From the IMG/VR virus record IMGVR_UViG_3300026512_000002, positions 1 through 64,000 of that record: a DNA stretch of 64,000 nucleotides; one strand, 5' to 3'. The notes under the pieces were generated by a model. That model saw nothing but the letters and a program-made list of their open reading frames with translations, did not search any database and had not been told where the DNA came from. The translations under genes and the position numbers were made by a program. Position 1 is the first letter of the stretch. Every line of letters starts with the position of its first letter. Of this stretch, positions 876 through 20,276 are shown one piece after another.

Positions 876-1946
876 ATGAATAAAACAGAGATATTAGTAA
901 ATGCATGTAGAAGTGGTTTAAACGACTATTTTCAAAGTGGATTAGATAAAGTAGATCTAGAAAAAGTGAAAAAAATAACAGTGTATGATAGCAATGATTT
1001 TAGTAATCTAAAATGGTTAGTTGAAAAAATGAAACTGACATTAAGCATACAATATGAAGACTTTAATGGTTCTTGGGAACTGTTGGAATATGAAAATGGG
1101 TTGAAAACTTATTATGGTAAATCTGATGGTTCTTGGGAACTGTTGGAATATGAAAATGGGTTGAAAACTTATTATGGTAAATCTGACGGATATTGGGAAA
1201 AGTGGGGATATGAAAATGGGGTGGAAACTTATTATGAAAACTCTGATGGGTTTTGGAAGAAGATAGCATATGAAAATGGGTTGAAAACCCATCATGAGAA
1301 ATCCAATGGTTCTTGGCAAAAGTGGGGATATGAAAATGGGTTGAAAACTTATTATGAAAATTCTAATGGTTATTGGGAAAAGTGGGGATATGAAAATGGG
1401 TTGAAAACTTATTATGAAAATTCTAATGGTTATTGGGAAAAGTGGGGATATGAAAATGGGTTGAAAACTTATTATGAAAGCTCTAATGGTCATTGGCAAA
1501 AGTGGGGATATGAAAATGGGTTGAAAACTTATTATAAAAATTCTGATGGATATTGGGAAAAGTGGGGATATGAAAATGGGTTGAAAACTTATTATGAAAG
1601 CTCTGATGGTCATTGGGAAAAGTGGGGATATGAAAATGGGTTGAAAACTTATTATGGTAAATCTGACGGATATTGGGAAAAGTGGGGATATGAAAATGGG
1701 TTGAAAACTTATTATGAAAGCTCTGATGGATATTGGAAGAAGTGGGGATATGAAAATGGGTTGAAAACTCACCATGAGAAGTCCAATGGTTCTTGGCAAA
1801 AGTGGGGATATGAAAATGGGTTGAAAACTTATTACGAAGATTCTGATAATGAAAAAGGGAAGTGGGAATATGATAAAAAAGGCAACTTTATATATTTCAC
1901 CAATTTCATTAAAAGAGATATTGCGATAAATATAAAATATAAATAA
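876..1946 (+). CDS. Trp/Tyr-rich 20-aa tandem-repeat protein (paralogue of upstream gene)
   Basis: SD AAGGAG before ATG; about 13-14 in-frame 60-bp units encoding YENGLKTYYE(N/S)S(D/N)GYWEKWG. Confidence 0.9.
   Translation: MNKTEILVNACRSGLNDYFQSGLDKVDLEKVKKITVYDSNDFSNLKWLVEKMKLTLSIQYEDFNGSWELLEYENGLKTYYGKSDGSWELLEYENGLKTYYGKSDGYWEKWGYENGVETYYENSDGFWKKIAYENGLKTHHEKSNGSWQKWGYENGLKTYYENSNGYWEKWGYENGLKTYYENSNGYWEKWGYENGLKTYYESSNGHWQKWGYENGLKTYYKNSDGYWEKWGYENGLKTYYESSDGHWEKWGYENGLKTYYGKSDGYWEKWGYENGLKTYYESSDGYWKKWGYENGLKTHHEKSNGSWQKWGYENGLKTYYEDSDNEKGKWEYDKKGNFIYFTNFIKRDIAINIKYK
1050..1870 (+). repeat. Coding 60-bp tandem repeat array
   Basis: Successive 60-nt lines 1081-1860 are nearly identical (agtggggatatgaaaatgggttgaaaacttattat...). 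Confidence 0.95.
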
Positions 1947-12822: not shown

Positions 12823-13725
12823 ATGACTAATTTAAATCAAAACACATATTCTCGTAAATTAGATCTGTTAAGTATTTTCAACATATGGTACACCCATATA
12901 TTGAAAAACGAAGATGATGTTGATCGTAATTATAGCGTTGATACTTACTGGTCCGATGATTCGGAAGATCTGTTATATAATAAATATAAACATAATATGG
13001 TGTTTTTTATGGAAAGGATGTTAACTGATATTGATTTTGTTGAGATTATTGTTAATGTTTTTAAATTATATGATATAACGTTAAATAATGTAACATTCTA
13101 TTCACCTAATGAGTATAATTATAAAACAGATACTATTATAGTGTCTGTTGAAATGGAAAAAGATATTTATAATAAACCACTTGTGCTTAATGGCGATATG
13201 CGTGAATATGTGCAATATTATATTGATAATATACGTGTAGGTTCTAGGGATGGATATATATCAGTAGAACCATCTGTTGTATCGGATGTTGTTAGAGATG
13301 ATTATGTATATATGTATGCTATTGGTAAAGTTATTTATAACACTTATGGTGATAGGTTTAGAGCTTTAATGGATACTATATATGAACATATGTTATATAT
13401 TAGATCAATTTGCATGTGTTATTGTGAAGATGCGAAAACCGATATATTGTTATCTAATGACGAGTTATTAAGTTCTGATTATGATAAGGAGTATGTTGTT
13501 AGTATATTAAAAGATTGTTCTACTATCAACGACTTTAATGAAGATGGTGACATTATTACATACATAGATATATTTGATGTGAAAACCATGTCTGATGGTA
13601 TATTAGTAGAAGTAGAAGTACATGGTCATAGGATAGATGATGATTATATAACAATGCTTATAATGTCTAGCTTATCAACATTTTGTAAGACTGTTAACCT
13701 ACCTAGTAATCTATCAATAAGGTAA
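12823..13725 (+). CDS. Hypothetical phage protein (SPxEYNYxTD / SRDG motifs)
   Basis: SD GGAGG; early-type motif CATATTAT-N6-G upstream. Confidence 0.75.
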   Translation: MTNLNQNTYSRKLDLLSIFNIWYTHILKNEDDVDRNYSVDTYWSDDSEDLLYNKYKHNMVFFMERMLTDIDFVEIIVNVFKLYDITLNNVTFYSPNEYNYKTDTIIVSVEMEKDIYNKPLVLNGDMREYVQYYIDNIRVGSRDGYISVEPSVVSDVVRDDYVYMYAIGKVIYNTYGDRFRALMDTIYEHMLYIRSICMCYCEDAKTDILLSNDELLSSDYDKEYVVSILKDCSTINDFNEDGDIITYIDIFDVKTMSDGILVEVEVHGHRIDDDYITMLIMSSLSTFCKTVNLPSNLSIR

Positions 13726-13765: not shown

Positions 13766-14112
13766 AAGTTATTTAATAATGAATCGTGCATTGGCAAGTG
13801 TTTCCGGCGGTTCATAGCATAGAATGCTACTTATAGGAAACAACACACATTTGTGTGTTCCATTGTAAAGTTGTAGCTCTGGTAGGAAGGAGCAGTGAGC
13901 GGACATTGTGTGTCGAAACATGTCGCGGCTCTTGGTAGAAATACCAGCGGTAATCAATCCGTCAGAACACGTAAACATGGCTGACTACCATGATTGCTGG
14001 AGTTGCTATCCTAAAAGCAACTCTTGAGTAAATATATACAACCCTATCTGCGTTTGCGATAGGGTTGTATATCATTAAGAAAAGAGGTTGATCCCCTCTT
14101 TTCTTTTTTTTT
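13766..14112 (+). ncRNA. Putative structured early ncRNA (~350 nt)
   Basis: TATATTAT at 13752; GC-enriched; helices include a perfect 15-bp stem 14034-14048/14058-14072; terminator AAGAAAAGAGG/CCTCTTTTCTT plus T-tract. Confidence 0.65.
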
Positions 14113-14219
14113 GATTATGGACGACATATGTTGAAATCATTTTCAATTATATATTATAGTAATAGTTAATGTGTTTATCATACAATATGGTATGATATAA
14201 TATTTATATTGGAGGAAAT

Positions 14220-14924
14220 ATGCGACAAGAAGTAGAATTAACATTAGAAGATGGTACAGTATATGGTACCTTTTCGTATGAAAAAAAATTGGACATTAGC
14301 GATGATAATATGTTCAATAATGTGAAAATTGGATCAATAACCGTATTATACGGTTATGATTTAATACCAACGAAAATACCTACATATACAATACCTATAT
14401 GTAAGGCAAACTCCAAACATTTTAATGATGAACTATTGGGGTTTAGAGAACAACTTAAGAAAAAGTTGGAAACGTGTGTCTATTATTCAGCCAAATTTGT
14501 ATTTACAACATTTGAGGATCTACAAGTTGGATATATGTGTGGAACAGCCAGTTATGATGTTGATCATGCAAATCAAGTGTTATCGTATACAGAAAATTGG
14601 ACTCATGGTGAGTTTTTAGAAAAATGCGGCGATGACAGTATACAGATGTACGCGCCAAGATCAAATTGGGGTATGGTTATACGTTATCCATCAACATCTT
14701 GTGATAAATATAGTAGTAAAAGATATGTGTTATTTGAAGCTATTGGCTTTATAACAGGTCTAGATAAGAAAGACTATGAATTAAAATGGCATATCGCAAC
14801 TAATATATTTACACTATCATCACCTACCTCTAAAAAAGGTAGGTTGATAGGAAAACGTGGAAGAACGATTATGAAAATCGAACATGTTGCTAAATATCTA
14901 AATGTTAAAATAATACTTAGATAA
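14220..14924 (+). CDS. Protein with C-terminal KH (RNA-binding) domain
   Basis: KGRLIGKRGRTIMKI GxxG-loop KH signature; SD GGAGG; TATATTAT at 14150. Confidence 0.7.
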   Translation: MRQEVELTLEDGTVYGTFSYEKKLDISDDNMFNNVKIGSITVLYGYDLIPTKIPTYTIPICKANSKHFNDELLGFREQLKKKLETCVYYSAKFVFTTFEDLQVGYMCGTASYDVDHANQVLSYTENWTHGEFLEKCGDDSIQMYAPRSNWGMVIRYPSTSCDKYSSKRYVLFEAIGFITGLDKKDYELKWHIATNIFTLSSPTSKKGRLIGKRGRTIMKIEHVAKYLNVKIILR

Positions 14925-14931
14925 TTATAAC

Positions 14932-14958
14932 TATGGGATCGAAAGATCCCATTTTTTT
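14932..14958 (+). terminator. Intrinsic terminator, copy 1 of a 27-bp direct repeat
   Basis: TATGGGATC-GAAA-GATCCCATTTTTTT, identical to 17665-17691. Confidence 0.85.
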
Positions 14959-14970
14959 TAAAGAGGACAA

Positions 14971-16476
14971 ATGAAATTATACGAAGAATTACAACGAATA
15001 GAGAATCGGGTAAATTTTACAGAACACGATATAGACCCAGTATGGGTTAATTTTATTAGGAAGTCATTTGGTGACAAATATGAAATTAAAACTGATTATA
15101 AAAGTGATGGGTTTTTATTTGATGTTGAGCGTGATATGTATATTGTTATTATGGAATTTAAACGTGATAAATTATTAGGTAAAAATAATATTGATTTAAA
15201 CGAAGTAATAGTTCAAGTTATTTATTATTTAAAGAAAGTTGAGAAGGATGGTAAAATTTTACCGAAGGTTGTTTTAATTGGAGATGTTAACGAAGTTGTT
15301 ATTTTTCCAACATATACAATCGAAAAATATTTGAGAATGGAGAATGTTGATTGGAATATCGCAGCTAGTGAAGCATATAAAAGTAATCGCGATATGTTGG
15401 ATATGTTAAAGGACGATGTACATGTTAAGTTTAAAGTTGAAAACGTGGATGTTTCTTTTAACGAGGAAAAATTCATCAATAATTTAAAAAGAATGGTTTA
15501 TGATTCGTTTTCTAAAATAAAGATTACTAAAATTAATATTGGAGAAGTATTTGTGAATCATATTAAAGGGTTGTTTGTTGACGCGAATGACTCGACTATA
15601 TTCAATTTCTTGCAGATAATGAAAGGTAATTATGCTCTTGCGATTAAGAAAAGGAATAAAAGTAAATATGTATTATATATAGAAGATGGTAATGTTGTTC
15701 AAGTGAATAGGGATAAATATGCTATATTGGAGAATACGTTTGAGCTCAATATGAGTAATCGTGAGTTTAAAGAAATGTTGCGAAATAAGGACGAGTTCGA
15801 AGATAGTGTTAAAAGAGTGAAAGAAGGGATTTTCTATACACCGTTACCGTTTGTGGATTTAGCACATCAATATATTGAAAAGGAATTTGGTAAAAATTGG
15901 AAAAGCGAATATTCTGTATATGATCCTGCGTGGGGAATGGGGAACTTAACTAGGGATTATGTATTTGATGACTTATATTGTTCAACATTGGATGGGGACG
16001 ACTTAAAATTAGCGAAGAATTTCAACAAGGGATCTAGGAAATTCCAGATGGACTTTTTGAACGATGATTTGCCAGAATTTATGGTGGAAGCTTTTAAAGA
16101 TAAAAGTAAGAAGTGGATTGTGTTTATGAATCCGCCGTATAAAAATGGTCCGTCTGGAATAAATCATAATAATGGAGTTGGATTTAATGTTAGTAAAACT
16201 AGTAATAAATTAGATATGAAAAAAGATGGAGTTAATGGTAATGACTTATATGTTCAATTTATATATAAAGCTATTAAGTTAAGATCCGAATATGGTGCAG
16301 ATCTAACCATATGCGTTTTTAGTAAAGCAACATATTTGAATGGTAAAGAAGGGAAAGGTTTAAGAAAATATTTAAGAAATAACAATGTTGAGTTTAAATG
16401 TGGATTTTTAGTAACTGGAAAGGTATTCAAGGGACTTGATGCTAAATGGCCAGTTAGTTTTACAATTTTAAAATAA
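14971..16476 (+). CDS. Type IIG-like fused PD-(D/E)xK endonuclease / N6-adenine DNA methyltransferase
   Basis: N-terminal SDG..(x12)..EFK..QVIYY; GIFYTP (motif X), YDPAWGMGNL (motif I), DFL, NPPY (motif IV), DLYVQF. Confidence 0.85.
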   Translation: MKLYEELQRIENRVNFTEHDIDPVWVNFIRKSFGDKYEIKTDYKSDGFLFDVERDMYIVIMEFKRDKLLGKNNIDLNEVIVQVIYYLKKVEKDGKILPKVVLIGDVNEVVIFPTYTIEKYLRMENVDWNIAASEAYKSNRDMLDMLKDDVHVKFKVENVDVSFNEEKFINNLKRMVYDSFSKIKITKINIGEVFVNHIKGLFVDANDSTIFNFLQIMKGNYALAIKKRNKSKYVLYIEDGNVVQVNRDKYAILENTFELNMSNREFKEMLRNKDEFEDSVKRVKEGIFYTPLPFVDLAHQYIEKEFGKNWKSEYSVYDPAWGMGNLTRDYVFDDLYCSTLDGDDLKLAKNFNKGSRKFQMDFLNDDLPEFMVEAFKDKSKKWIVFMNPPYKNGPSGINHNNGVGFNVSKTSNKLDMKKDGVNGNDLYVQFIYKAIKLRSEYGADLTICVFSKATYLNGKEGKGLRKYLRNNNVEFKCGFLVTGKVFKGLDAKWPVSFTILK

Positions 16477-16636
16477 TAGGAGTGATAAAATGAACATACT
16501 AGTTGAGTAAATTAATATATGTAGCGATGATATTAAAATGGGTATATTTGTAAATAATGATAACTATACTGAATTGTTGACTAATAAACATTGTATAAGG
16601 TTAACAATACATCAGTGGTTAGTAATAGGAGAAATA

Positions 16637-17659
16637 ATGGATAATTTTAATAACTTTAAATTTGATGTTTATGATGTAGATGCAAAATTAATTGGGGATG
16701 TTATATTGTATAATATGGATGATGAAATCTCACTAACAGATTGGTTGAAAGATGTTAGAAGTGAAAACAAAACAACTAAAGGGTTATGTGTTAAATCACC
16801 ATTGAGAACATCATATAGTGAACGAGGAACCATGGTAGATAAAGCATTAGGATATTTATTAAATGCTGGAAATAACATGGAGAAATCAGCTAGAAGTGTT
16901 GGTTTGATGAGTATAGCATTTTCCAATGCACATGGAGAATCTATTGAATCTACTAACCTTAAGCGAGCATTTTTAACTATGGCTTTCCGTAGAAGCTATG
17001 CAAAACATCAATGGTTTGAAGAGAAGAAGGAATTTATCGCACCAACTTTCAAGTCCAAACAACATCAACAACAAGTTTATACCGATGCTATCATCTTTTC
17101 CATTTTCAACAACCAAAACCAAACAGGTTCGCTCCGCGACATCAAATACGACAATAAAACCTTTCAAGTGGAAAACCACTTCTTTCCTTTTAGCAAGAAA
17201 ATAGTTCAATCTTTAATAGATTTATATATTGATGAAGATGATAGGTTTGACCTAATAGAAGAAGATATGAATCGCTATGGTCGTAAAGATAGAATCATGA
17301 ATAGAATAATCGAAAGATATTTGCGTTCCGATTCATTTAGTGAAGAAGCGTTAGATGTTTACAATAAAGCATTGTCAATGTATAAGAATGCGTTTAAGTA
17401 TTTTGTAGATGAAGAATATCAAGAAAAGGATGTGAACGGAACATTATGTACAACTTATTTAAACGAAGTATGGGACACATCATGGTATCAGATGAAGATT
17501 GTTATAGAAAACCGATTTAAAGATGATTATAAGGAGTTTAAGAATCTCTATAATAAATTAGAGAAACGAATGAGGCAACATGTTATTGATTGTGGAGTTA
17601 TAATTCCTAATGAAGGTGAAAAATATTATGATTTTGAAACCAATATGGTGATTGAGTAA
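16637..17659 (+). CDS. Probable specificity/C-terminal half of the split Type IIG-like enzyme
   Basis: SD AGGAG before ATG 16637. Sequence continues the pattern expected after WPVSFTI (FDVYD..., DWL, NHFFPF, WD..WYQ). Confidence 0.6.
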   Translation: MDNFNNFKFDVYDVDAKLIGDVILYNMDDEISLTDWLKDVRSENKTTKGLCVKSPLRTSYSERGTMVDKALGYLLNAGNNMEKSARSVGLMSIAFSNAHGESIESTNLKRAFLTMAFRRSYAKHQWFEEKKEFIAPTFKSKQHQQQVYTDAIIFSIFNNQNQTGSLRDIKYDNKTFQVENHFFPFSKKIVQSLIDLYIDEDDRFDLIEEDMNRYGRKDRIMNRIIERYLRSDSFSEEALDVYNKALSMYKNAFKYFVDEEYQEKDVNGTLCTTYLNEVWDTSWYQMKIVIENRFKDDYKEFKNLYNKLEKRMRQHVIDCGVIIPNEGEKYYDFETNMVIE

Positions 17660-17664
17660 TTGAT

Positions 17665-17691
17665 TATGGGATCGAAAGATCCCATTTTTTT
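17665..17691 (+). terminator. Intrinsic terminator, copy 2 of the 27-bp direct repeat
   Basis: Identical to 14932-14958. Confidence 0.85.
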
Positions 17692-17911
17692 AAATAAGAT
17701 ATCACGTGTTATTGAGATACGAACATGTGATAAGAGTAAACATGTTCAATAGTACTATAAAATCTGATCATGGTTACGATGAAGTATCTTTTTATTAATA
17801 ATATGACTGGAAATAGTTTGAATAAAGATAAAATTGTTGAAGTAATAAAAACAGTTTTTTATTTATAGTTGTTTATATAGTATATGTTATAATAATTGTA
17901 ATTGGAGTTAT

Positions 17912-18235
17912 ATGATTAAAGAAGTCTACAGTAATGCAATTTTCTGTTCAAATATTGAAAATTGTGAAAACAGAGAGTGTGTGTTTAGGTTTAATGGTTA
18001 TAGAAAAGAAGTAGACCAAATACATGATATTGATAACTATGTGATAAAATTAGATAATTTAAAATCTAATGATTGTGGTTTTATAATGCCAAATCTTATG
18101 TGTGATATTAACCATGATGGTTCTATAACAGTATCTGATATTGTTGGCAATATGCGAGTTGTAGAAACGTATTATGGGTATGATAAACAAGAATGTATGA
18201 TTTTGTTTAGCAGAGAGCATTGTATGGGTGAGTAG
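17912..18235 (+). CDS. Cys-rich hypothetical protein
   Basis: SD GGAG; FC-x4-C-x4-C-x-R pattern. Confidence 0.7.
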   Translation: MIKEVYSNAIFCSNIENCENRECVFRFNGYRKEVDQIHDIDNYVIKLDNLKSNDCGFIMPNLMCDINHDGSITVSDIVGNMRVVETYYGYDKQECMILFSREHCMGE

Positions 18236-18328
18236 TGATTAATATATTTAATGTGGTAAAAATGAAAATTCTTTACTAGATGTTACAAAATAGTAGTAAA
18301 ATGATTAATGAATACATATTATAGTTGT

Positions 18329-18672
18329 GTCTGTAGGTTATAATACCATAACTTATGGATAATGGAACCGTTTGCGTGTTCCTCAGCTGTCAAGCTGTCT
18401 TCAATAGGAGGAGATATGAAGAATTTATAGATTAGCGATTCCGGTGGTGAATCGTTAATAAGCTTGAGGTTTGATAATACCTCGTAAAAAAAATATCCGT
18501 ACACTAGGGTGCGGTTCCCTAGAAATTGTTGGTTAAGTGTAAGCGCATACATTTGACCACTTTTCCAATCAGCCAATAGGCATGTGTGTTCTAATATACA
18601 CAGCCTAGCATCTTGCGGTTGATTGTAGAAAAAAGAGAGGTTCTGATGCTACCGTAGTTCTCTTTTTTTTTA
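18329..18672 (+). ncRNA. Putative structured early ncRNA (~345 nt)
   Basis: CATATTAT-N6-G (18315-18329); serial hairpins with G-U pairs on the + strand (TTAGCGATTC/GAATCGTTAA; TGGTTAAGTGTA/TACATTTGACCA); T-tract end; no long ORF. Confidence 0.65.
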
Positions 18673-18936
18673 TTAAATAACTAGTTATTTGCTGCAGATA
18701 ATGCTAAAATTGATATATTGTAACATATTATGTTGAAATATTAAGAATATTGCTGACGCGATAATATGATGATAATATAGTGGATTGTAAATCTGTTAAT
18801 CGTAGATTGCTGATAGTGAAAATTGAAGTAAAAATTAAATGTATATTATGAAGGTGTAGTTGTTATATAAACAAATAATGAATATTGTATATATTACTCT
18901 CTCATTATTTATGTTATTTTTTTATTAGGAGGAAAT

Positions 18937-19357: not shown

Positions 19358-20237
19358 TATGGCGGAAATATTTTACGAAACGTCAATACTATGGGAAAGC
19401 GTATCCCTAAAAAAAACAGGCCGCACTGGCGTACCAGGAACACCAAGTAGAGATCTTGGTCAACAAAAAAATCCGTTTGGCCAACGAAAATGATCCATGT
19501 TGTCTGGGAGTATTAGTATGCTCCATTGAAGGACAGTCTCTGGTGATAATGGCAAAAGGTCGAAAGGCCTGGAAAGAAGACGAAATTCGTAACAATGTCT
19601 AAGATAATGGCATTGGGGTATAAAGGGCGGTGGCCTGGAAGTCCTACGATATAAGTCTTTTTTACATAGGTGTATCTTTGATATATTTATGTAACGCTTT
19701 TTCCGTTCAAATGATGAGAAAAGCTATGCTTAATGGCGAAAGCCAAAAAGTAAGCTTTAAGATCATCAATATTGATCGGGTGAAGCAACTCCTACATAAT
19801 AATGATTGGACAAGTGCCATTGGGCACGAAGATGTCGCAATCATTGTTTCTAAAGAATTGGGAATGGAGGTTAAACATAACCGAATTTCCCATTCTTTAG
19901 AAAAGGAGGATGTCTTGATTTTAAGGCAGTATTTCGGAGGGCGTTTGCCCGAAGGAACTACTACCTTAAATGAAGATCAGCTCAAGTTATTGAGCTGGGT
20001 AGAAATTACTCTTAGCAAGTAATTTCTATTTATCCTTCTAAGCTAACAGTTTAATTCGGTTTGACTAACCGAAGTATATTGTTAGTAGGAGTGGAAACAA
20101 AAAAACCTAATAGGTCGGCCAGGTAGGAATGGCCGTTGACTAGACATAGTCTTAAAGAGAGTTAGTCACTCTCAATATTCCGATCCATCAAAAAAAAACA
20201 CCACCCGTTCTGGGTGGTGTTACTAATCCTTTTTTTT
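19357..20237 (+). other. Highly structured early transcript enclosing acrIII-1 (~320-nt 5' and ~200-nt 3' folded regions)
   Basis: Early promoter, continuous helices, 5'/3' end pairing (19359-19372 with 20174-20188), terminator AACACCACCC/GGGTGGTGTT. Confidence 0.7.
19678..20022 (+). CDS. acrIII-1: AcrIII-1 viral ring nuclease (DUF1874; degrades cA4, anti-type III CRISPR)
   Basis: MIYLCNAFSVQM, SAIGH (catalytic His), NRI, LEKED and GGRLPEG match the SIRV1 gp29/STIV B116 family; TTG start after AGGTG. Confidence 0.9.
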   Translation: MIYLCNAFSVQMMRKAMLNGESQKVSFKIINIDRVKQLLHNNDWTSAIGHEDVAIIVSKELGMEVKHNRISHSLEKEDVLILRQYFGGRLPEGTTTLNEDQLKLLSWVEITLSK

Positions 20238-20276
20238 ATCATTAAACAATCTATTAATACATTATATAGGATTAAT

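What the first reader, a model, noticed from the sequence alone, without database searches (positions are those of the whole stretch)
14932..17691. Split Type IIG-like R-M cassette bracketed by an exact 27-bp terminator duplication
Seen: identical terminators flank the two genes. The first gene's SD begins immediately after the upstream terminator, with no room for a promoter, so expression would depend on read-through. The enzyme appears broken between WPVSFTILK and MDNFNNFKFDVYD by ~160 bp containing a dead in-frame start (ATG 16490, TAA 16508) and a new RBS. Inference: a cassette gained or lost by recombination at terminator hairpins, with attenuated expression of a nuclease-MTase used for self-protection or competitor exclusion.
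Basis: partly seen in the sequence, partly recalled or inferred. Interest (0 to 1): 0.6.

Follow-up and report, generated by a model that had tools for sequence, protein, structure and literature searches.

The report
Phage restriction-modification cassette between twin terminators
A 228-kb hydrothermal-vent phage carries a two-gene restriction-modification enzyme of a large, mostly unannotated phage family, sitting between two identical copies of a transcription terminator; related phages show the same kind of cassette being gained or lost at a terminator.

Summary
An exact 27-bp terminator (8-bp stem, GAAA loop, T-run) lies at 14932-14958 and 17665-17691. These are its only two copies in the 227,696-bp phage genome.

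The two genes are the halves of a Type IIG/IIL-like enzyme. ORF1 is a PD-(D/E)xK nuclease plus a gamma-class N6-adenine methyltransferase. ORF2 is a probable target-recognition domain (weak fold evidence).

The family is large (over 2,281 hits), sits mainly on large phage contigs, and is barely covered by Pfam, PHROGs, NCBIfam or PADLOC. About 84% of members are fused (about 810 aa) and 16% are split at the same boundary. The split is therefore an alternative architecture, not a fresh break.

Only 149 bp of the 160-bp spacer are lineage-specific. A roughly 92%-identical relative from another vent sample lacks them.

No empty-site relative of this phage exists in the collections, because the flanking genes are orphans. 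In a distantly related lineage of the family (proteins about 31-35% identical), however, the cassette sits between nrdA and a gp25-like gene, bracketed by exact 31-33-bp terminator duplicates. A 90%-identical relative there has the empty site with one terminator.

[quoted passage not shown] It is a new member of a known kind. Read-through expression remains inference.

The parts
14220..14924 (+). Upstream gene A (234 aa), an orphan with a weak KH-like C-terminus. Its transcript would end at the left terminator.
   Evidence: ORF list. Pfam KH hits are below cut-off. No relatives in viral contigs, metagenome contigs or the 5.8-billion protein set. A promoter-like site at 14131-14160 and a terminator at 14077-14105 lie upstream.
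14932..14958 (+). Left terminator copy T1 (stem-loop 14933-14952, then the T-run).
14971..16476 (+). ORF1, 501 aa: RM subunit. N-terminal PD-(D/E)xK nuclease (E18, D46, E62, K64, Q82, Y86), a middle helical region, and a gamma-class N6-adenine methyltransferase from about residue 271 (FYTP 288-291, DPAWGMG 318-324, NPPY 387-390). SD at 14961-14966.
   Evidence: Invariant columns in a 51-sequence alignment. AF2 model with pLDDT 84.9. Foldseek hits to DrdV 1.5e-9, BpuSI, HsdM, BsaXI and MmeI. VIA gives DrdV Z 16.3 over residues 1-501 and M.TaqI Z 15.5. No direct Pfam, PHROG, NCBIfam or PADLOC hit. 10 of 51 relatives hit Pfam Eco57I PF07669.
16477..16636 (+). 160-nt spacer between the two genes, with stops in all frames. 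It holds the mini-ORF 16490-16510 (MNILVE*) with its own AGGAG, and the SD of ORF2 (AGGAG 16625-16629).
   Evidence: No Rfam match. Fold z-score -0.49. Unique in the genome.
16485..16633 (+). 149-bp lineage-specific indel, bounded by an imperfect direct repeat of the stop+SD junction (TAATAGGAG..ATAA at 16474-16488 and 16622-16636, 13 of 15 identical).
   Evidence: A 492-nt contig of an independent vent run (X2, about 92% identical) joins 16484 to 16634, skipping 149 bp (table 5 and record 9).
16637..17659 (+). ORF2, 340 aa: separately encoded C-terminal part of the enzyme, a probable target-recognition domain plus helical bundle. It has a 17-aa tail that relatives lack.
   Evidence: Aligns to residues 501-806 of fused P0001 and to the second genes of split relatives. 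AF2 model with pLDDT 86, pTM 0.86. No Foldseek PDB hit. The best VIA-wide hits are all TRDs of gamma-MTase enzymes (DrdV 634-1029 and M.BseCI at Z 5.1, then PglX, CamA, HsdS, LlaBIII, MmeI), but they are weak.
17665..17691 (+). Right terminator copy T2.
   Evidence: In the 98.6%-identical relative L008 only the 3' arm and the T-run survive, and a different gene follows.
17692..17911 (+). 220-nt intergenic region with promoter-like sites and an imperfect palindrome, before the next gene (17912-18235). It marks a real transcription-unit boundary.

Best explanation
The two genes form a promoterless restriction-modification cassette in a jumbo phage.

ORF1 supplies a PD-(D/E)xK nuclease and a gamma-class N6-adenine methyltransferase. 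ORF2 supplies the DNA-recognition part. Together they would rebuild a Type IIG/IIL-like enzyme (the MmeI/DrdV/BpuSI architecture) that methylates its site on the phage's own DNA and cuts unmethylated DNA of the host or of co-infecting phages. This functional role is inferred.

The two-gene form is an old, recurrent variant of a family that is mostly fused. The extra 149 bp in the junction is a recent indel with no detectable function, and it leaves ORF2 with its own ribosome-binding site.

The cassette most likely entered, and can leave, the intergenic site behind gene A by recombination that duplicates the resident terminator. [quoted passage not shown] No promoter fits between T1 and the SD, so transcription would come from upstream by read-through of T1 and stop at T2 (inferred).
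For: Enzyme class. The invariant residues are D46, E62, K64, Q82 and Y86, the FxTP motif, motif I, and NPPY. The fold matches DrdV, BpuSI, MmeI, HsdM and M.TaqI. The top-ranked, though weak, ORF2 fold matches are TRDs. A fused homologue covers both ORFs without loss. Pfam Eco57I hits 10 of 51 relatives.

Split as a natural form. About 490-aa relatives end at the same W-x-[LVI]-[ST]-F-[ST]-[IVM] boundary (window: W-P-V-S-F-T-I). Their partner genes follow after 3-34 nt or overlap. 24 of 147 loci are split, some of them near-duplicate contigs. The tree needs at least 6 changes of the split state. Substitutions against relatives are biased to third codon positions in ORF1.

Spacer. A relative lacks the 149 bp.

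Cassette. The terminator pair is unique in the genome. Synteny with L008 breaks right after the T-run of T2. In L082 and L101 the same family's unit sits between nrdA and a gp25-like gene, bracketed by exact 33- and 31-bp terminator duplicates. L163, about 90% identical, has the empty site with one copy of the L101 terminator, and over 50 more relatives have nrdA, one terminator and gp25. RM units are bracketed by exact direct repeats of 20 bp or more in 5 of 104 loci, against 6 of 785 neighbouring genes (Fisher p 0.005).

Precedent. [quoted passage not shown] PeSL-mediated shuffling and mini-circles in T4-type phages are described in PMC2839356 and PMC4122927.
Against: No empty-site or alternative-context relative was found for this phage's left junction. 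No deletion or circle junction appears in the source run, which is held only as contigs.

The distantly related lineage's RM proteins are only about 31-35% identical to the window's, so the support is by analogy. The repeat is 27 bp exact (30 with one mismatch), just under the 30-bp criterion of PMC2853133. Composition of the cassette does not differ from its surroundings.

No activity, specificity or expression data exist. The window proteins hit no curated family directly. The TRD assignment rests on Z of about 5. Binding of ORF1 to ORF2 could not be tested.
Confidence: 0.6

Rival explanations
1. The cassette is old and resident. The identity of the two terminators comes from gene conversion, or from copying one terminator onto the other, and has nothing to do with gain or loss of the genes.
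For: In L082 and L101 the hairpins differ between the two phages but are identical within each genome. This shows homogenisation or repeated re-creation of the pair. In L008 the right-hand terminator is present but decayed, so a terminator at ORF2's end predates the split of those lineages. The cassette shows no compositional anomaly.
Against: The empty site with a single terminator in L163, and in over 50 relatives, shows real presence/absence polymorphism at such sites. Repeat bracketing is enriched at RM units. 27 bp is short for conversion unless recombination between the copies is frequent, and frequent recombination would itself delete the cassette.
Confidence: 0.2
2. The pair is a decaying, non-functional remnant of a fused enzyme: a gene broken by an insertion, as the reader first read it.
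For: Most of the family is fused. The 160-nt spacer is far longer than in other split members. The spacer contains a dead mini-ORF. ORF2 substitutions against relatives are not strongly third-position biased, and ORF2 has an odd 17-aa tail.
Against: Both ORFs are intact and full length. All invariant catalytic residues are kept. ORF2 starts where the second genes of other split members start and has a good SD. A relative without the 149 bp is already split, with stop, SD and ATG within 11 nt. Both models are confident.
Confidence: 0.12
3. The proteins act only as a DNA methyltransferase that shields the phage genome from host restriction. The nuclease-like domain is inactive or used for something else.
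For: Phages often carry solitary methyltransferases. The strongest fold matches are to the methyltransferase core. No cleavage data exist.
Against: The nuclease triad, the helix-1 Glu and the QxxxY motif are invariant across 51 diverse members. This argues for a selected catalytic site. The whole-length match to DrdV includes the N-terminal domain.
Confidence: 0.2

Closest known systems
Type IIG/IIL single-chain R-M enzymes (MmeI, DrdV, BpuSI, Eco57I)
   Same: The domain order is the same: PD-(D/E)xK nuclease, helical connector, gamma-class N6A methyltransferase (motifs X, I, IV), then a C-terminal recognition part. The best structural matches are DrdV (Foldseek 1.5e-9; VIA Z 16.3 over residues 1-501), BpuSI and MmeI. 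Some relatives hit Pfam Eco57I.
   Different: Sequence similarity to solved members is marginal (E about 0.01-0.02, methyltransferase core only). The window proteins hit no curated model. The recognition part is a separate gene here. The TRD fold match is weak (Z 5.1). The family lives mainly on large phage contigs.
Type IIB enzymes with a separate specificity subunit (BcgI, CspCI, BsaXI), against single-chain AloI/PpiI/CjeI (PMC4081073)
   Same: An RM subunit (nuclease plus methyltransferase) works with a separately encoded recognition subunit. Fused and split versions of one architecture coexist.
   Different: Type IIB S subunits carry two recognition domains for bipartite sites. ORF2 has the size and model of a single recognition domain plus a helical bundle.
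[quoted passage not shown]
   Same: The RM genes have no transposase or integrase. They are flanked by a direct repeat that is unique in the genome and lies at the 3' end of the upstream gene. In the L101/L163 pair the repeat aligns with a single copy in the genome that lacks the insert.
   Different: That work described bacterial chromosomes and required repeats over 30 bp. Here the setting is phage genomes, the repeat is 27-33 bp, and it coincides with an intrinsic terminator.
PeSL regulatory cassettes of T4-type phages (PMC2839356, PMC4122927)
   Same: Stem-loop terminators act as points of exchange that gain, lose or swap accessory genes between closely related large phages. That system also showed excision as mini-circles.
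   Different: PeSLs are composite promoter-plus-terminator units present in many copies per genome. Here there is a terminator only, with no promoter, and exactly two copies.

Membership tests
Type IIG/IIL R-M enzyme | N-terminal PD-(D/E)xK nuclease domain with catalytic D...ExK | tested here: met
   D46, E62 and K64 are invariant in 51 sequences, together with E18 and Q82/Y86. The predicted alpha-beta-beta-beta-alpha-beta core places them correctly. The DrdV alignment spans residues 1-501.
Type IIG/IIL R-M enzyme | Gamma-class N6-adenine methyltransferase (motif order X, I, IV with NPPY) | tested here: met
   FYTP 288-291, DPAWGMG 318-324 and NPPY 387-390 are conserved. VIA Z is 15-16 to M.TaqI, LlaGI, DrdV and MmeI.
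Type IIG/IIL R-M enzyme | Nuclease, methyltransferase and recognition domain in one polypeptide | tested here: not met
   In the window the recognition part is a separate gene, 160 nt downstream in another frame. It is met in 123 of 147 related loci.
Type IIG/IIL R-M enzyme | C-terminal target-recognition domain of the MmeI/HsdS type | tested here: inconclusive
   Foldseek finds nothing. The VIA-wide top ranks are TRDs of DrdV, M.BseCI, PglX, CamA, HsdS and MmeI, but Z is 5.1 or less, below the tool's noise guidance.
Type IIG/IIL R-M enzyme | Match to the curated family model (Pfam Eco57I PF07669) | tested here: not met
   The window ORF1 has no hit at E 0.1. 10 of 51 relatives pass at E 0.001.
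Type IIG/IIL R-M enzyme | SAM-dependent site-specific methylation and cleavage at a fixed distance | not testable with these tools
   This needs expression, a methylome and cleavage assays.
Type IIB (BcgI-like RM + S) | Separate S subunit with two recognition domains | tested here: not met
   A separate subunit is present, but ORF2 (340 aa) models as one beta-rich domain plus a helical bundle. It aligns to the single C-terminal part of the fused relatives.
[quoted passage not shown] | RM genes flanked by a direct repeat that is otherwise unique in the genome, with no mobility gene inside | tested here: met
   There are two copies only. The insert holds only ORF1, the spacer and ORF2.
[quoted passage not shown] | Repeat longer than 30 bp | tested here: inconclusive
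   The window repeat is 27 bp exact, or 30 bp with one mismatch. It is 33 and 31 bp in L082 and L101.
[quoted passage not shown] | A related genome without the insert carries one copy of the repeat | tested here: inconclusive
   This is not testable for the window phage, because the flank genes are orphans. It is met in the distantly related lineage: L163 has a single terminator identical to both copies in L101.
PeSL cassette | Composite strong promoter plus stem-loop | tested here: not met
   The SD and ATG follow T1 within 12 nt, and no promoter-like site lies between them.
PeSL cassette | Many similar copies spread over variable regions of the genome | tested here: not met
   Only two copies exist with up to 3 mismatches. 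Some related phages (L021, L023, L079, L096) do have multi-copy intergenic repeats.
PeSL cassette | Excised mini-circles | not testable with these tools
   The runs are held only as contigs, and no joint was seen.

The most novel reading that the evidence does not exclude
Intrinsic terminators may serve as portable recombination sites for a promoterless RM cassette that circulates among large phages, somewhat as attC hairpins do for integron cassettes but without a dedicated integrase. The identity of the two flanking copies would then be actively maintained. L082 and L101 hint at this: their hairpins differ between the phages, with compensatory stem changes, yet are identical within each genome, and at least three divergent RM alleles occupy the same nrdA|gp25 site.
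Probability: 0.15. Interest if true: 0.7.

Novelty: new member of a known kind. Interest (0 to 1): 0.45.

Why it matters
It puts a name and an architecture on a large protein family. The family has over 2,000 detected members, and many sit on contigs of 100-670 kb. Pfam, PHROGs, NCBIfam and PADLOC barely recognise it, so restriction-modification carried by large phages is probably under-counted.

It also extends two known ideas. One is RM genes as self-inserting units with long target duplications. The other is terminator-mediated module shuffling in T4-type phages. Here both apply to jumbo phages from a hydrothermal vent and from gut or rumen samples, with a clean occupied-versus-empty site pair that can be tested at the bench.

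The coexisting fused and split forms offer a natural series for asking how a specificity domain becomes a separate subunit.

Tried and rejected
Empty-site search for this phage.
- The terminator pattern in viral contigs gave nothing.
- Gene A searched in viral contigs, metagenome contigs and the 5.8-billion protein set found only itself.
- The genes at 12823 and 17912 also had no relatives.
- Laying three runs on 13800-18800 gave no contig across either terminator other than the source, and no T1xT2 joint. These runs are contigs, so rare variants cannot show.

Complex and structure libraries.
There is no verdict on binding.
- The ESM Atlas feature search for ORF2 gave no usable hit.
- The atlas fold library was not installed.

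The spacer.
- No Rfam family matched, there is no excess structure, and there is no other copy in the genome.
- I dropped a Bacteroidetes-type TAnnTTTG promoter reading. The motif is not enriched in intergenic DNA of this genome, and over half of the crudely called ORFs (109 of 199) have an SD-like motif.
- The 17-nt match to L098 upstream DNA is too weak to build on.

Extent of the repeat. A test for repeat extension beyond 27-30 bp found none.

Tandem duplication. I considered that L082's upstream 806-aa gene was a tandem paralogue that would explain the duplicated terminator. It is nrdA.

First enrichment control. The control windows at a fixed offset were too weak, so I replaced them with a gene-anchored control.

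Full report
**Setting.** The window is the first 64 kb of a 227,696-bp IMG/VR virus record (linear, CheckV 89% complete, 27.9% G+C). The window holds a ribonucleotide reductase gene, tail-fibre genes and virion genes. The only run that holds the stretch in full is a hydrothermal-vent metagenome, probably the source. Two other runs from other studies hold parts of it; one is also labelled a vent metagenome, the other has no organism label.

**1. The observation.** The 27-bp sequence TATGGGATCGAAAGATCCCATTTTTTT is present exactly at 14932-14958 and 17665-17691.
- With up to three mismatches there is no third copy in the window or in the whole genome, and shuffles give none.
- Extended, the repeat is 30 bp with one mismatch. 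Sequence 80 nt to either side shows no similarity above shuffles.
- Each copy folds into an 8-bp stem with a GAAA loop (-12.4 kcal/mol, z -3.6 to -4.0) followed by 7-8 U.
- My scan gave 167 terminator-like calls genome-wide, with nested versions of one hairpin counted separately. This is the only identical pair.
- Other long exact repeats in the genome are coding tandem repeats or a tandemly duplicated whole gene unit near 68-70 kb.
- The SD and ATG of ORF1 follow the T-run within 12 nt. ORF1 ends at ...WPVSFTILK. After 160 nt with stops in every frame, including the mini-ORF 16490-16510, ORF2 starts at 16637 behind an AGGAG.

**2. What the genes are.** Neither protein hits Pfam, PHROGs, NCBIfam or PADLOC, nor any solved structure by sequence. 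The word search with ORF1 nevertheless found over 2,281 relatives at 30-37% identity. Most are 800-820 aa and a minority about 490 aa.

A fused relative (P0001, 807 aa) aligns to ORF1 over its residues 16-499 and to ORF2 over 501-806. The two window genes are therefore the two parts of one enzyme, with nothing missing at the junction.

In a 51-sequence alignment the following are invariant:
- E18, D46, E62, K64, Q82 and Y86, which form a PD-(D/E)xK site with a QxxxY helix;
- the FxTP motif, motif I (D318, G322), and NPPY 387-390.

The AF2 model of ORF1 (pLDDT 84.9) matches DrdV best (Foldseek 1.5e-9; VIA Z 16.3 across residues 1-501). Next come BpuSI, a Type I HsdM, BsaXI and MmeI. The methyltransferase core gives Z 15-16 against M.TaqI and LlaGI. 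Ten of 51 relatives pass Pfam Eco57I. A family profile reaches HsdM and DrdV only at E 0.01-0.02.

ORF2 models confidently (pLDDT 86, pTM 0.86) but has no Foldseek match in the PDB. In the search that does not depend on Foldseek, the top ranks are almost all recognition domains of gamma-methyltransferase enzymes:
- DrdV 634-1029 and M.BseCI at Z 5.1;
- then PglX, CamA, HsdS, LlaBIII and MmeI.

These scores are below the tool's own noise guidance. I take ORF2 to be a recognition subunit, with that caveat.

The family is found on at least 98 IMG/VR contigs, many of them 100-673 kb. It also occurs in 69 GTDB genomes, among them Clostridium and Salinicoccus isolates and many rumen MAGs. The sampled neighbourhoods look phage-like.

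**3. The split.**
- Of 147 fetched loci with both halves, 123 are fused and 24 split; some of the split ones are near-duplicates.
- The short relatives end at the same W-x-[LVI]-[ST]-F-[ST]-[IVM] boundary as ORF1 (window: W-P-V-S-F-T-I).
- Their second genes are homologous to ORF2 and start at the equivalent residue.
- Their junctions overlap or are at most 34 nt long.
- A FastTree of the N-terminal parts needs at least six changes of the split state. It shows one clade of 14 split members. The window protein sits on a long branch, so its placement is unsure.

The split is thus a recurrent, inherited two-subunit form. This parallels the known coexistence of RM+S (BcgI, BsaXI) and single-chain RMS (AloI, CjeI) enzymes (PMC4081073).

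What is peculiar to the window is the length of the junction. A 492-nt contig from an independent vent run (about 92% identical) joins 16484 directly to 16634. That relative therefore has TAA, the same AGGAG and the ATG of ORF2 within 11 nt. The 149 bp are bounded by a 13-of-15 direct repeat of the stop+SD junction, so I cannot tell insertion from deletion between the repeats. Short junctions elsewhere favour insertion.

The insert has no copy elsewhere in the genome, no Rfam match and no excess structure. In one relative (L114) the same junction holds a GIY-YIG homing-endonuclease gene on the opposite strand. The junction therefore tolerates mobile inserts. Whether the 149 bp is a remnant of one is unknown.

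**4. The terminator pair as a cassette boundary.**

*For this phage.* Gene A and the neighbouring genes have no relatives in any collection, so an empty site cannot be looked for. Two pieces of evidence bear on the right boundary. Contig L008 is 98.6% identical to 16907-17605. Relative to the window it lacks 28 nt of the ORF2 tail and the 13-nt 5' arm of T2. It keeps the 3' arm and T-run with two changes, no longer folds, and continues into a gene that the window genome does not have. Homology therefore ends right after the T-run.

*For the family.* I compared 300 nt upstream of each RM start with 300 nt downstream of its stop.
- Six of 126 loci have exact direct repeats of 23-43 bp.
- With near-duplicates removed, 5 of 104 RM units are bracketed by a 20-mer or longer, against 6 of 785 other genes in the same loci (odds ratio 6.6, Fisher p 0.005).
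- A sliding control at the same spacing gave 1 of 4,073.

Some of these phages have multi-copy intergenic repeats, so bracketing is not exclusive to RM genes.

*The clearest case* is L082 and L101, two phages about 90% identical to each other.
- In both, a split RM unit sits between nrdA and a gp25-like baseplate gene.
- In each, the unit is bracketed by an exact terminator duplicate of 33 bp (L082) or 31 bp (L101). The RM start follows within about 25 nt, with no room for a promoter.
- L163 is about 90-91% identical in both flanks and has no RM gene. It has a single terminator identical to both copies in L101, followed by the same downstream sequence.
- More than 50 further relatives (nrdA 77-82% identical) have nrdA, one terminator and gp25 within 78-103 nt.

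It is passed in a distantly related lineage of the same enzyme family.

Two details remain unexplained. First, the hairpins of L082 and L101 differ at seven or more positions yet are identical within each genome. Second, L159 shares L082's gp25 (100%) and terminator but has an RM allele only 67-71% identical. Either insertion recurs and duplicates whatever terminator is resident, or the copies are homogenised.

**5. How it most likely works.**
- *Shown:* the domain content, the conserved catalytic residues, the unique terminator pair, the lack of space for a promoter, and the presence/absence polymorphism at terminators in relatives.
- *Inferred:* that ORF1 and ORF2 assemble; that the enzyme methylates phage DNA and cuts unmodified host or competitor DNA; that transcription enters by read-through of T1 from the gene A promoter region (a candidate lies at 14131-14160) and ends at T2; and that the cassette entered by recombination that duplicated the terminator.

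**6. Comparison with what is known.**
- Architecture: Type IIG/IIL enzymes, with the subunit split known from Type IIB.
[quoted passage not shown] That work reported flanking repeats at significantly higher frequency for RM genes than for average genes, and 46-bp unique repeats overlapping the 3' end of the upstream gene (PMC2853133).
- Phage context: PeSL-mediated shuffling and mini-circles in T4-type phages (PMC2839356, PMC4122927). Here, however, there is no promoter part and there are only two copies.

**7. Verdict.** 'Broken' should read 'split form with a recent 149-bp indel'. The cassette idea is plausible, and well supported by analogy. The locus is a new member of known kinds, of moderate interest. 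The most useful by-products are the recognition of a large unannotated phage RM family and a clean occupied/empty pair (L101/L163) for experiments.

Noticed in passing
window 876-1946 (repeats 1066-1800); genome 68.2-69.8 kb: ORF 876-1946 holds 60-nt tandem repeats encoding WEKWGYENGLKTYYE-like units. Paralogous sequence lies at about 68 kb, where a whole gene with its promoter-like and terminator sequences is tandemly duplicated (96-bp and 60-bp exact repeats about 800-820 bp apart).
   Followed up: no
L114 2252-3301 (-): A GIY-YIG homing-endonuclease gene (Pfam PF01541, 30.6 bits) sits exactly between the two halves of a split RM gene pair in a related viral contig.
   Followed up: partly
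L082 3913/6396; L101 561/3044: The flanking terminators differ between two phages that are 90% identical to each other, yet are identical within each genome. This suggests concerted evolution or repeated insertion.
   Followed up: partly
L163 1549-4865: The nrdA gene of the empty-site phage is in two ORFs (534 + 565 aa, against 806 aa in L082), with two extra segments of about 460 nt. There is no Rfam intron match. It could be an intein or an inserted endonuclease domain.
   Followed up: partly
window 17696-17727: An imperfect palindrome (ATCACGTGTT ... AACATGTGAT) lies in the 220-nt intergenic region after the right terminator. It may be an operator for the next transcription unit.
   Followed up: no
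window 20191-20266 (-): A sub-threshold Rfam Phe_leader match (34 bits against a gathering score of 55) overlaps a strong terminator at 20197-20221. It is probably spurious.
   Followed up: no
L008 757-1125: In the 98.6%-identical relative, the gene after ORF2 encodes a protein with a CCxxHD motif. It has no Pfam hit and no homologue anywhere in the window's genome.
   Followed up: partly
split-junction spacers of L003, L079, L088, L089, L095, L128: Several 16-34-nt junctions between the split RM genes share a TAnnTTTG-type motif (mostly TATATTTG, often followed by TAAATAA). It may be an internal promoter for the second gene in those phages.
   Followed up: no
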